Shown in pieces: positions 33,669 through 36,516 of a stretch of DNA of 64,000 nucleotides. The stretch covers positions 13,020,001-13,084,000 of the forward strand of contig NC_043020.1 of the NCBI RefSeq assembly GCF_006345805.1, read 5' to 3'. How positions within the stretch are numbered: the first letter of the stretch is position 1; each line of letters begins with the position of its first letter. The position numbers and the translations under genes were made by a program. The notes below the pieces were generated by a model, which saw only the letters and a program-made list of their open reading frames with translations, was not told where the DNA came from and did no database searches. Origin of the DNA: Octopus sinensis. Lineage: Eukaryota.

Positions 33669-34015
33669 TTGCATAAGCGAGGTCAGTTTTTACAGATGGA
33701 TGTCCTTCCAAATGTCAACCATGTTACAGTGTGGACTGAGGGCTTTTCAAGTGGCAGAAACCAAACCTCACAAGTTAACATATCATCATTGTTTTCCCAA
33801 AGTTCCAAGTTTCAGTTACCGACATTTAATATTTGTTATTTGTGGAGGCACAATGGCCCAGTGGTTAGGGCAGCAGACTCTATCTGAGATGCACTGAAAT
33901 GATCATTTAACAGACATTGTGTGTGTATGTGTGAGTGAGTGTGTGTGCCTCTGTGTGTGTGTGTGTGTGTGTGTGTGTCTGTGTGTGTGAGTGTGTTTGT
34001 GTGAGTGTGTGGTGT

Positions 34016-34091
<76 letters not shown>

Positions 34092-34189
34092 TGTGTGTGT
34101 TGTGTGTGTGTGTGTCTGTGTGTGTGAGTGTGTTTGTGGTGAGTGTGTGTGTGTGAGTGTGTGTGTGTGAGTGTGTGTGTGTGTGTGTT

Positions 34190-34246
<57 letters not shown>

Positions 34247-34321
34247 AGTGTGTTTGTGTGTGTGTGTGTGTGTGAGTGTGTGTGTGTGTGTTTGTGTGTG
34301 TGTCCAAATTTATTGACTTAC

Positions 34322-34351
34322 CTTAACTGTTAATCTAGGCCATGCCTCTTC
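34322..34351 (-). CDS. ROS1: 30-nt micro-exon copy A (EEAWPRLTVK), phase 0 to 0
   Basis: Acceptor tttgtttctttttctttccag, donor AAG|GTAAGT. In frame with the 31685 exon. Confidence 0.65.
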
Positions 34352-35401
34352 CTGGAAAGAAAAAGAAACAAAAATATTTATTTTTAATTGAATGATAAAA
34401 AAAAATTTTGTTTTTTAAACGAATCAAACGATATTAAGAAACCATTTTGTGACCCTCATGGAATGGAATTAATCAACAGAGCAACCCACCTCCCCACCCT
34501 CGACTACCCACCTACCTACCCCACCCTTAGCTACTTAAACCCCACGCCCAGATACCCACACCCCACCTCCAGCTACCCACCCCCTATTAGGTGCAAAAGT
34601 AGGTTCCTCTACCTGGCTGCCCAACCTGTTAGAAATGACAGAGTTTTCTTCAAATCATATCATTGAAATTGTTAAATAAGCACAGGATGGATAGCTGGAT
34701 GGATGGGCACGACTGGAATGTCTTTGATCCTGAGACTGCCTGATCAAGTGATGTGTGTGTCTGGAGTGTATGTACAAGTGCTGTATATATTGTAGAAGTG
34801 TTGTATGTATGTGAAATGTATGCACATGTGTGTGTATGTGTATGCGTGTGTGTATGTGAGTGTGTGTGTGTGTGTGTGTTATGGTTCCCTTGCCGTGACA
34901 TCATGTGACAGTTGTAAATGAGTGTCACACTGATACAAGCAGTGTCCTTTGTTCCCAATCTTCTGTGGAAACATGTCTAACCATGGGAAAATATCATCTT
35001 GCTTGGAAGCATGAGGATTGGTGACAGGAAAGGCATCCATCTGGCCATAGAAAATCTGCCTCAAGGCAGCGAGCCGACAAAAACATTAGCAGGGCAGAGC
35101 TGGCAGAAATGTTAGCACGCTGGGCGAAATGCTTAGCGGTATTTCGTCTGCCGTTATGTTCTGAGTTCAAATTCCACCGAGGTCGACTTTGCCTTTCATC
35201 CTTTCGGGGTCGATAAATTAAGTACCAGTTACTCACTGGGGGCGATGTAATCGACTTAATCCCTTTGTCTGTTCTTGTTTGTCTCCTGTATGTTTAGCTC
35301 CTTGTGGGTAGTAAAGAAATAAGAAAATCTGCCACTGAAATGATCATTTAACAGACATTGTGTATGTGTGTGTGTGTGTGCGTGTGTGTGTGTGTGTTGT
35401 G

Positions 35402-35435
<34 letters not shown>

Positions 35436-35455
35436 CCCCTAATTTATTGACTTAC

Positions 35456-35485
35456 CTTAACTGTTAATTCAGGCCATGCCTCATC
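35456..35485 (-). CDS. ROS1: 30-nt micro-exon copy B (DEAWPELTVK), phase 0 to 0
   Basis: Acceptor tttgtttctctttctttgcag, donor AAG|GTAAGT. Paralog of 34322-34351 within a local tandem duplication. Confidence 0.65.
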
Positions 35486-35933
35486 CTGCAAAGAAAGAGA
35501 AACAAAAATATTTATTTTTAATTGAATCATTAAAAAAAAATTTGTTTTCAAATGAATCAAACGATATTAAGAAACCATCTTGTGACCCTCTTGAAATGGA
35601 ATTAATCAACAGAGCAACCCACCTCCACACCCTCGACTACCCACCTACCTACCCCACCCTTAGCTACTCACACCCCACGCTCAGCTATCCACACCCCACC
35701 TCCAGCTACCCACTCCCTATTAGGTGAAAAAGTAGGTTCCTCTATCTGGCTGCTCAACCTGTTAGAAATTACAGAATTTTCTTCAACTCATATCATTGTG
35801 TTAAATAAGCACAGGATGGATAGTTGGATGGATGGGCACAGCTGGAATGTCTTTGATCCTGAGACTGCCTGATCAAGTGATGTATGTGTCTAGAGTGTGT
35901 GCATGAGTGCTGTATGTATATGAAATGTATGCG

Positions 35934-35969
<36 letters not shown>

Positions 35970-36516
35970 TGTGTGTGTATGTGTGTGTGGTGTGTGTGTA
36001 TGTGTGTGTGTGTATGTATGTAGTGTGTGTATGTTGTGCACATGTAAGGTGTGCTTATGCATAATGCTGTCGTTTAGCCCCAGGCCAACTGACAGTAAGA
36101 AGCTATGATCAAGGGCATCCTTACCATAGCCACAATGTCCTTCCTTTTCGTGTTATCACTGACTGCCTTAACCCTTTCATTCTTTAAGGTGGCATGATTA
36201 ATTTGAGGGTGATTTAGCTGCTATTTATTGCAGAATAAATGGCTTTTTAAAGGTTCTCCTTAAATGTGGATATAGTGTGAGTTGCAAGTATATGAACGCA
36301 TACATGTGTGTGAGTGTGTGTGTGTGTGTGTGGTGTGGTGTGTGTGGTGTGTGTGTGTGTGTGTGTGTGATTGTTCAAATGTGTGTATGTGTAAAACACC
36401 CCCGCAAGCATTTTAATCAGGCATGGTATGCATAGCAGCCAAACCCAGAAAAACCAACAGGAAGCACCATTTATAGATGGACTGGGTAGGACAAGAGAGA
36501 GAGAAAGAGGGTTAAA

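What the first reader, a model, noticed from the sequence alone, without database searches (positions are those of the whole stretch)
33892..36010. Tandemly duplicated 30-nt micro-exon in the ROS1/Sevenless Cys-rich N-terminus
Seen: a diverged local duplication contains two frame-preserving 30-nt exons, DEAWPELTVK (35456-35485) and EEAWPRLTVK (34322-34351). Both keep a strong pyrimidine tract, a CAG acceptor and an AAG|GTAAGT donor, and both join in frame to EKSCETGC. They differ by D/E and a charge-reversing E/R. Flank divergence looks too high for allelic haplotypes. From memory, some vertebrate ROS1 isoforms also have a short segment just before RESCEVGC. Inference: alternative (either, both or neither) micro-exon use could tune the N-terminal region of an octopus ROS1/Sevenless receptor. 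The ORF track and most gene predictors would miss it.
Basis: partly seen in the sequence, partly recalled or inferred. Interest (0 to 1): 0.8.

Follow-up and report, generated by a model that had tools for sequence, protein, structure and literature searches.

The report
Duplicated 30-nt micro-exon in octopus ROS1
An octopus ROS1 receptor gene carries two adjacent, slightly diverged copies of a 30-base exon that lengthens a loop of its N-terminal CATCH domain; a sea snail has one, optionally used copy at the same spot, and public octopus gene models already include both copies.

Summary
On the minus strand, 35485-35456 (DEAWPELTVK) and 34351-34322 (EEAWPRLTVK) are two 30-nt, phase 0-0, exon-like units. 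Each has a pyrimidine tract, a CAG acceptor and an AAG|GTAAGT donor. They lie in a local duplication of about 650 nt whose unique flanks are 92.5% identical.

The gene is a ROS1 orthologue. Five downstream exons splice cleanly and match chicken and mouse ROS1 ectodomains (E 1.8e-32 and 2.4e-25).

Two Octopus bimaculoides models (A0A0L8G0C2 and UPI00071D95C3) read ...CHQLCYNPQHK-DEAWPELTVK-EEAWPRLTVK-EKSCETGC.... So gene predictors did not miss the exons, and the duplication exists in a second genome.

The gastropod Gigantopelta aegis has a single 30-nt, phase-0 micro-exon at the same intron position, in front of an exon of the same 61 nt. Its annotated isoforms X1 and X2 include or skip it.

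The insert falls between the last two CxxxC motifs of the CATCH domain, which I infer to be capping loop 2 of the autoinhibitory arm. The loop would be 9, 19 or 29 residues long.

Alternative use in octopus and any functional effect remain untested. This is a tandem exon duplication of a conserved micro-exon, of modest interest.

The parts
35456..35485 (-). Micro-exon copy A, 30 nt, phase 0-0, DEAWPELTVK. The acceptor tttGCag contains a UGC; the donor is AAG|gtaagt.
   Evidence: present in the O. bimaculoides models P0006 and P0151
34322..34351 (-). Micro-exon copy B, 30 nt, phase 0-0, EEAWPRLTVK. The acceptor is tttCCag; the donor is AAG|gtaagt.
   Evidence: present in P0006 and P0151
35333..35988 (-). 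Duplication unit A: CA-rich tract, about 450 nt of unique intron, exon A, (CA)n of about 75 nt (35433-35359), then a 26-nt tail AATGTCTGTTAAATGATCATTTCAGTG.
33892..34879 (-). Duplication unit B: CA-rich tract, about 475 nt of unique intron, exon B, (CA)n of about 390 nt (34303-33918), then the same 26-nt tail.
35061..35321 (-). SINE insertion in the spacer between the two units. It is flanked by the 12-nt direct repeat GGCAGATTTTCT (35333-35322 and 35060-35049). The family has at least 10 copies in the window.
31625..31685 (-). 61-nt exon EKSCETGCTTALNLYEKRKT(D). It carries the last CxxxC motif of the CATCH domain and has the same length and phase as the Gigantopelta exon at L002:82427-82487.
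28214..28449 (-). 236-nt exon encoding most of FN3-1.
25584..25668 (-). 85-nt exon FKVIAFIK...TLPHG, the end of FN3-1.
24124..24414 (-). 291-nt exon encoding FN3-2 (Pfam fn3, E 7.9e-12).
22343..22471 (-). 129-nt exon EAETEKPYLVLAANN..., the start of the first propeller region.
9102..9143 (-). Core of the next ROS1 exon (GSKVLYKSKTELMQ). Its boundaries were not refined.

Best explanation
Shown: the window holds the 5' part of an octopus ROS1 orthologue on the minus strand. [quoted passage not shown] This gives two micro-exons 1.1 kb apart. Both keep near-consensus splice sites and an open frame. Both are written into two public O. bimaculoides gene models as consecutive exons.

Shown: a gastropod ROS-like gene has one 30-nt phase-0 micro-exon at the same intron position, annotated as optional.

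Inferred: the micro-exon is an old molluscan cassette exon, and the duplication arose in the octopus lineage. It is older than the split between the window's genome and the O. bimaculoides reference. Each included copy adds 10 residues between the third and fourth CxxxC motifs. [quoted passage not shown]

Inferred, weaker: in Sevenless and mouse ROS1 the CATCH domain helps hold the ectodomain in a bent-over, autoinhibited state, so loop length could tune that latch. Both exons are multiples of three, the intron between them is long, and no competing RNA structure was found. Nothing therefore enforces mutual exclusion, and joint inclusion, as in the models, is the default expectation. The (CA)n tracts that begin about 20 nt after each donor (about 75 nt versus about 390 nt), and a UGC at the acceptor of copy A only, are candidate handles for differential regulation.
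For: Sequence and duplication. Exon-likeness beyond chance. Clean spliced reading frame through five downstream exons. ROS1 identity: (9oyz_B 1.8e-32; 10gh/10ft 2.4e-25; Sevenless 9e-13). Pfam on P0151 finds five fn3 stretches and a tyrosine kinase domain. Both micro-exons are in A0A0L8G0C2 and UPI00071D95C3, with identical peptides although the window differs from those models at 4 other residues. Gigantopelta X1/X2 and its exon structure (78-nt exon, 30-nt micro-exon, 61-nt exon, all phase 0 at the relevant junctions). The loop lengths of 9 without a micro-exon match between the two molluscs. CATCH topology and role of the capping loops: PMC11743138, PMC13100127, PMC13044245. The vertebrate loop carries a 9-residue extra segment at the same place. 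No docking or selector-type inverted repeats were found.
Against: No transcript evidence was reachable. The inclusion of both exons rests on two gene models whose evidence basis is unknown. The exon (10% diverged, 3 of 3 changes nonsynonymous) is no better conserved between the copies than the intron flanks (7.5%). One copy could therefore be drifting, although 30 nt give little power. The octopus and gastropod micro-exon peptides are barely alignable (KTKEAEERMQ versus DEAWPELTVK), so their homology rests on position, length and phase only. The AlphaFold model of the gastropod isoform had pLDDT below 50 over the CATCH region, so the placement in the H3-H4 loop is inferred from CxxxC spacing and the papers rather than modelled. 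Molluscan CATCH regions have five CxxxC motifs against four in mouse, so helix numbering is not certain.
Confidence: 0.7

Rival explanations
1. Only one copy is a working exon. The other is a decaying pseudo-exon that the gene predictors added because its splice signals are still intact.
For: Exon divergence (3 of 30, all nonsynonymous) is not lower than flank divergence. Under neutral drift at 7.5%, the chance of keeping the AG, the GT, the frame and no stop codon is roughly 0.4 (my estimate), so intactness alone proves little. Copy B has lost the UGC next to the acceptor.
Against: Both peptides are identical in a second genome that differs elsewhere in the same exons. Two models with different 5' ends agree on including both. 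Both donors are perfect 9-mers, and the 9 nt after GTAAGT are also identical.
Confidence: 0.2
2. Neither unit is spliced in vivo. They are intronic exon look-alikes, and the gene models are ab initio artefacts.
For: No RNA evidence was obtained here. The loop without them (9 residues) equals the gastropod skipped form.
Against: The full exon-like pattern is expected 0.00 times by chance. It sits at the same intron position, with the same 30-nt length and phase, as an annotated gastropod exon. It is in frame with both neighbouring exons.
Confidence: 0.07
3. The duplication is an assembly artefact, either uncollapsed haplotypes or a mis-joined repeat.
For: The region is rich in microsatellites, and a 100-N gap lies 3.5 kb upstream.
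Against: The copies show 7.5% divergence, indels, different (CA)n lengths and a private SINE with a target-site duplication between them. Both peptides occur in tandem in models built from a different genome sequence.
Confidence: 0.03

Closest known systems
Tandem exon duplication as a source of alternative exons (Kondrashov & Koonin 2001; Letunic, Copley & Bork 2002; cited from my own knowledge)
   Same: Adjacent exons of equal length and phase with clear sequence similarity, lying in a duplicated intron segment.
   Different: The classic cases are mutually exclusive pairs. Here both copies are multiples of three, they are 1.1 kb apart, no competing RNA structure was found, and the available models include both. 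The outcome is more likely loop lengthening than exon swapping.
Gigantopelta aegis ROS-like gene, isoforms X1 (XP_041354581.1) and X2 (XP_041354582.1)
   Same: A 30-nt, phase 0-0 micro-exon lies in the same intron, directly before a 61-nt exon that starts two residues ahead of CxxGC. The loop is 9 residues when the exon is skipped.
   Different: It is single-copy. The peptide is KTKEAEERMQ, with little similarity to the octopus peptides. The donor is weaker (gtatgg).
Vertebrate ROS1 CATCH domain (mouse 10ft/10gh/9pvp, chicken 9oyz; PMC13100127, PMC13044245)
   Same: There is a short extra segment between the last two CxxxC motifs (NDTYATICE / NKTYTRECE), and the CATCH domain takes part in the bent-over autoinhibited state.
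   Different: The segment is 9 residues and contains a cysteine. I could not test whether it is a separate, optional 27-nt exon. My recollection that the canonical human protein lacks it is memory only.
Short cassette micro-exons with strong splice sites, some dependent on SRRM4/eMIC and a UGC near the acceptor (Irimia et al. 2014; Torres-Mendez et al. 2019; from my own knowledge)
   Same: Length of 30 nt, frame-preserving, very strong splice sites, inserting into a surface loop of a signalling protein. Copy A has a UGC at -5 to -3.
   Different: There are no expression data. Copy B and the gastropod exon lack the UGC. 30 nt is at or above the usual 27-nt cut-off.
Intronic CA-repeat splicing regulators bound by hnRNP L (Hui et al. 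2003, 2005; from my own knowledge)
   Same: Long (CA)n tracts begin about 20 nt downstream of each donor.
   Different: That mechanism is known only from mammals.

Membership tests
ROS1/Sevenless receptor tyrosine kinase | N-terminal cysteine-rich CATCH motif followed by FN3-1 and FN3-2, with best similarity to ROS1 ectodomains | tested here: met
   The spliced window exons hit chicken ROS1 9oyz_B at E 1.8e-32 and mouse ROS1 at 2.4e-25, ahead of all other FN3 proteins. The alignment starts at SCETGC/SCEVGC.
ROS1/Sevenless receptor tyrosine kinase | Multiple FN3 domains, a transmembrane segment and a C-terminal tyrosine kinase domain | tested here: met
   These parts are not in the window. The O. 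bimaculoides model P0151, which shares these exons, has five fn3 stretches and PK_Tyr_Ser-Thr at E 1e-45.
ROS1/Sevenless receptor tyrosine kinase | Three YWTD beta-propellers | not tested
   They lie outside the window. Pfam at E<=0.001 listed no Ldl_recept_b for P0151, and I did not pursue this.
Tandem exon duplication | Neighbouring exons of the same length and phase with significant similarity, plus homologous flanking intron | tested here: met
   30 nt each, 27 of 30 identical, flanks 92.5% identical over about 450 nt.
Tandem exon duplication | Mutually exclusive use of the copies | not testable with these tools
   No RNA data are available. Both models include both copies. No steric, frame or RNA-structure constraint was found.
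Alternatively spliced cassette micro-exon | Very short, frame-preserving internal exon with strong splice sites | tested here: met
Alternatively spliced cassette micro-exon | Documented inclusion and skipping | tested here: inconclusive
   Octopus could not be tested. The positional orthologue in Gigantopelta has annotated isoforms with and without it, but the evidence behind those isoforms is unknown.
SRRM4/eMIC-type neural micro-exon | UGC motif close to the 3' splice site | tested here: inconclusive
   Copy A is tttGCag and has the motif. Copy B (tttCCag) and Gigantopelta (attcttcag) lack it.
CATCH-domain capping loop 2 (H3-H4 loop) | The insert lies between the third and fourth helix of the two disulfide-stapled hairpins | tested here: inconclusive
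   The insert lies between the last two CxxxC motifs, and the papers give the topology. The AF2 model of the region had pLDDT below 50.

The most novel reading that the evidence does not exclude
The loop between the last two CxxxC helices of the ROS1 CATCH domain is a splice-tunable element of the autoinhibitory arm that is conserved from molluscs to vertebrates: a 30-nt cassette in gastropods, and possibly a 27-nt segment in vertebrates. Octopuses have expanded it by exon duplication into a three- or four-state length switch (9, 19, 19' or 29 residues). The copies would be regulated differently through their CA repeats and through a UGC present only in copy A.
Probability: 0.15. Interest if true: 0.6.

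Novelty: new member of a known kind. Interest (0 to 1): 0.35.

Why it matters
ROS1 is the largest receptor tyrosine kinase. Recent structures show that its N-terminal arm, including the CATCH domain, holds the receptor in an autoinhibited, bent-over state. If splicing changes the length of a CATCH loop, and does so at the same place in distant animals, it would be a natural handle on receptor autoinhibition. The octopus duplication would then be a small, clean example of how exon duplication adds states to such a handle. If the exons are simply constitutive, this is an ordinary lineage-specific loop expansion that is already captured in public gene models.

Tried and rejected
- The search for homologous proteins with the window exon peptides and with the N-terminus of P0151 returned nothing. 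It did not even return P0006/P0151, so that word index evidently lacks these eukaryotic proteins.
- The look-up of encoding contigs found no record for P0151 or for two window ORFs. No second octopus genomic locus could be fetched, so exon and intron conservation between species could not be compared.
- L001, an ENA contig with a cephalopod-like exon 4/5 orthologue, has no recognisable upstream exons within 10 kb.
- The upstream exon (...CSDGCQLY...CHQLCYNPQHK) is not in the window. A candidate at 55757-55694 (CFHSCIFNLE...) does not match the O. bimaculoides N-terminus and was dropped.
- The AlphaFold2 model of Gigantopelta X1 with a 4-row alignment had mean pLDDT 59.8, and below 50 across residues 15-93. 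It is uninformative for the loop. No fold search was run on it.
- An inverted-repeat scan for docking or selector RNA structures found only microsatellite complements.
- Literature searches for a ROS1 micro-exon found nothing relevant. NM_001378902.1 is a human ROS1 transcript, but its N-terminal difference could not be read.
- Simple unequal crossing-over between the two (CA)n tracts was considered as the origin. It does not fit, because the duplicated unit includes the 26 nt beyond the second (CA)n and a unique spacer of about 180 nt.

Full report
**The observation**

On the minus strand the window reads ...ttgtttctctttctttgcag|GATGAGGCATGGCCTGAATTAACAGTTAAG|gtaagtcaataaatt... at 35485-35456, and ...ttgtttctttttctttccag|GAAGAGGCATGGCCTAGATTAACAGTTAAG|gtaagtcaataaatt... 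at 34351-34322. The translations are DEAWPELTVK and EEAWPRLTVK, and only this frame is open in either unit.

A pairwise alignment with per-segment counts shows a local duplication. Each unit consists of:
- a CA-rich tract;
- about 450-475 nt of unique sequence (92.4% identical, 34 substitutions, 25 gap columns);
- the 30-nt unit (27 of 30 identical, all three changes nonsynonymous);
- an identical donor plus 9 further nt;
- a (CA)n tract, about 75 nt in copy A and about 390 nt in copy B;
- an identical 26-nt tail.

The unique part has no other copy in the 64 kb. Between the units lies a spacer of about 450 nt. Of this, 261 nt are a SINE of a family with at least 10 copies in the window, bracketed by the 12-nt direct repeat GGCAGATTTTCT.

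The composite pattern Y8-N-CAG-N30-GTAAGT occurs twice, against 0.00 expected in 100 dinucleotide-preserving shuffles. AGGTAAGT occurs three times on both strands, and two of those are these donors. The two hits are copies of one original, so they count as one independent event.

**The gene**

Downstream on the same strand I could chain exons at 31685-31625 (61 nt), 28449-28214 (236), 25668-25584 (85), 24414-24124 (291) and 22471-22343 (129). All have CAG acceptors and GT donors. They give an uninterrupted reading frame, EKSCETGCTTALNLYEKRKTDELENATLPAP...NNRSITVF.

Against solved structures, this spliced peptide matches:
- a 2311-residue 'tyrosine-protein kinase receptor', 9oyz_B, which is chicken ROS1 according to PMC13044245, at E 1.8e-32;
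- mouse ROS1 ectodomains (10gh, 10ft, 9pvp, 9pwq) at about 2e-25;
- Drosophila Sevenless at 9e-13, and generic FN3 proteins below that.

The alignment starts exactly at SCETGC/SCEVGC.

**Existing gene models**

The cluster look-up names it UniRef100_A0A0L8G0C2, an Octopus bimaculoides 'fibronectin type-III domain-containing protein' of 1411 aa. It also returned a second, 2031-aa model, UPI00071D95C3 (P0151), which carries five fn3 stretches and a tyrosine kinase domain.

The two models have different N-terminal starts. Both read ...NCSDGCQLYRAALHSSCHQLCYNPQHK DEAWPELTVK EEAWPRLTVK EKSCETGCTTALNLYEK.... Three things follow.

1. Gene predictors did not miss the micro-exons. Both copies are already in public models as consecutive exons.
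2. The window is not the sequence those models were built on. It differs at STELH[EKPG]IH versus [QTPV] and at LHQ[E/A]NN. Both micro-exon peptides are nevertheless identical, so the duplication exists in at least two genomes and is not an assembly artefact.
3. The exon that precedes copy A (...CHQLCYNPQHK) is not in the window. The intron upstream of copy A is therefore longer than 28.5 kb and includes a 100-N gap at 39533-39632.

**A positional homologue outside cephalopods**

Among the hits was a 321-aa 'proto-oncogene tyrosine-protein kinase ROS-like isoform X2' of the gastropod Gigantopelta aegis (XP_041354582.1). Its cluster mate, isoform X1 (XP_041354581.1, 331 aa), differs only by ten residues at the same place...SNCQRACTSSTTQ[KTKEAEERMQ]KQNCIQGCNLALDIYANK....

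I fetched the locus (L002, GCA_016097555.1) and mapped the exons:
- a 78-nt exon ending in phase 0 (...TSSTTQ|gtaaga);
- 2010 nt of intron;
- a 30-nt exon, ttattcttcag|AAAACAAAGGAAGCAGAAGAACGGATGCAG|gtatgg;
- 5048 nt of intron;
- a 61-nt exon KQNCIQGC...KIK(G), the same length and phase as the octopus exon 31685-31625.

The gastropod micro-exon is single-copy in its locus. Without micro-exons, the spacer between the last two CxxxC motifs is 9 residues in both molluscs. With one micro-exon it is 19, and with both octopus copies it is 29.

The peptides themselves are hardly similar, so the homology claim rests on intron position, length and phase. I consider that good but not conclusive.

**Where the insert sits in the protein**

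The papers behind the solved structures describe the ROS1/Sevenless N-terminus as a CATCH domain. [quoted passage not shown] In Sevenless, F279 of capping loop 2 packs against FNIII-4 (PMC11743138). In mouse ROS1, the CATCH domain and FN3-1 contact YWTD-B, and the N-terminal arm is autoinhibitory (PMC13100127).

The micro-exons fall between the last two CxxxC motifs, which by that topology is the second hairpin's loop. Mouse and chicken ROS1 chains carry a 9-residue segment at this very place: CALKC-NDTYATICERES-CEVGC and CPLKC-NKTYTRECETVS-CKFGC. Whether it is optional in vertebrates I know only from memory and could not test.

An AlphaFold2 model of the gastropod X1 protein was too poor over the CATCH region (pLDDT below 50) to confirm the loop assignment. 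That step remains inference.

**How it most likely works**

Shown:
- a real tandem duplication of a micro-exon with intact, very strong splice signals;
- in-frame junctions on both sides;
- inclusion of both copies in two gene models.

Inferred:
- Both copies are spliced in at least some transcripts (I put this at about 0.65).
- Nothing forces them to be mutually exclusive. Both are multiples of three, the intron between them is 1104 nt, and no docking or selector complementarity was found.
- The main consequence is therefore a longer CATCH loop rather than a swap of alternatives.

Speculative:
- Loop length tunes the autoinhibitory latch.
- The (CA)n tracts starting about 20 nt after each donor, with their five-fold length difference, act as CA-repeat splicing elements. 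The UGC present only at copy A's acceptor acts as a micro-exon enhancer motif. Together these could give the copies different regulation.

**Evidence that limits the claim**

The divergence between the copies is no lower in the exon (10%) than in the flanks (7.5%), and all exon changes alter the protein. With 30 nt this cannot separate relaxed constraint, diversification or drift. My rough estimate is that a neutral copy would stay intact with probability about 0.4. No RNA data and no second octopus genomic sequence could be reached. The origin of the duplication is unresolved, and a simple exchange between the two CA tracts does not fit the unit boundaries.

**Comparison with what is known, and novelty**

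This is a tandem exon duplication of a short cassette exon, which is a well-known evolutionary route. It occurs in a gene where the exons are already annotated. Two things appear undescribed, since I found nothing in the literature searches:
- the recognition that the two octopus exons are paralogues;
- the presence of a 30-nt cassette at the same intron position in a gastropod, within the CATCH loop region.

I rate it a new member of a known kind and of modest interest. The interest would rise if splicing at this loop proved to be conserved and functional in ROS1 generally.

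Noticed in passing
window 44431-48744: A (GCCAA)n array of about 1 kb (211 copies) is followed directly by a 70-bp satellite of 46.8 copies at 99% identity. Together they form a 56-63% GC island in a window that is otherwise 28-43% GC.
   Followed up: partly
window 31788-32907: A 309-bp tandem repeat (3.6 copies, 97% identical) lies in the ROS1 intron and ends about 100 nt upstream of the acceptor of the 61-nt exon.
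   Followed up: partly
window 39533-39632: A run of 100 N (a scaffold gap) lies inside the long intron upstream of micro-exon A.
   Followed up: no
window 50001-52000: Extremely AT-rich, low-complexity stretch with 8.6% GC.
   Followed up: no
window 41353-42257 (-), 40273-40611 (-), 56785-57081 (+): By eye, these ORF fragments look like mariner/Tc1-type transposase remnants (for example ...PHPTYSPDIAPSDFYLFRSLQNSLNGKNF...).
   Followed up: no
window 59217-61720: A large tandem duplication with a period of about 1066 nt contains long trinucleotide-type low-complexity runs. The ORFs 60084-60293 and 61150-61359 are identical.
   Followed up: no
P0006 / P0151 (O. bimaculoides models), N-termini: The two models start differently (MRASQAVL... 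versus MSTEVKQM...). By eye neither shows an obvious signal peptide, and they show four CxxxC motifs against five in Gigantopelta. Both are probably incomplete at the 5' end.
   Followed up: partly
L002 3001-100343 (Gigantopelta aegis CM027793.1): The 'ROS-like' gene models are only 321 and 331 aa, span 97 kb, and end in what looks like read-through after FN3-2 (...PNPGNCKFVWLCMSTVPS). This is either a truncated annotation or a short secreted isoform.
   Followed up: no
L001 10034-11814 (ENA ERZ21867824 ctg94923l): A contig from an ENA assembly carries ROS1 exon 4 and exon 5 orthologues that are 51% and 70% identical to octopus in tblastn. This is probably cephalopod or other mollusc DNA of unknown species.
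   Followed up: partly
window 35486-35492 vs 34352-34358: A single G/C difference at -4 of the acceptor gives copy A a UGC (tttGCag) that copy B lacks (tttCCag).
   Followed up: partly
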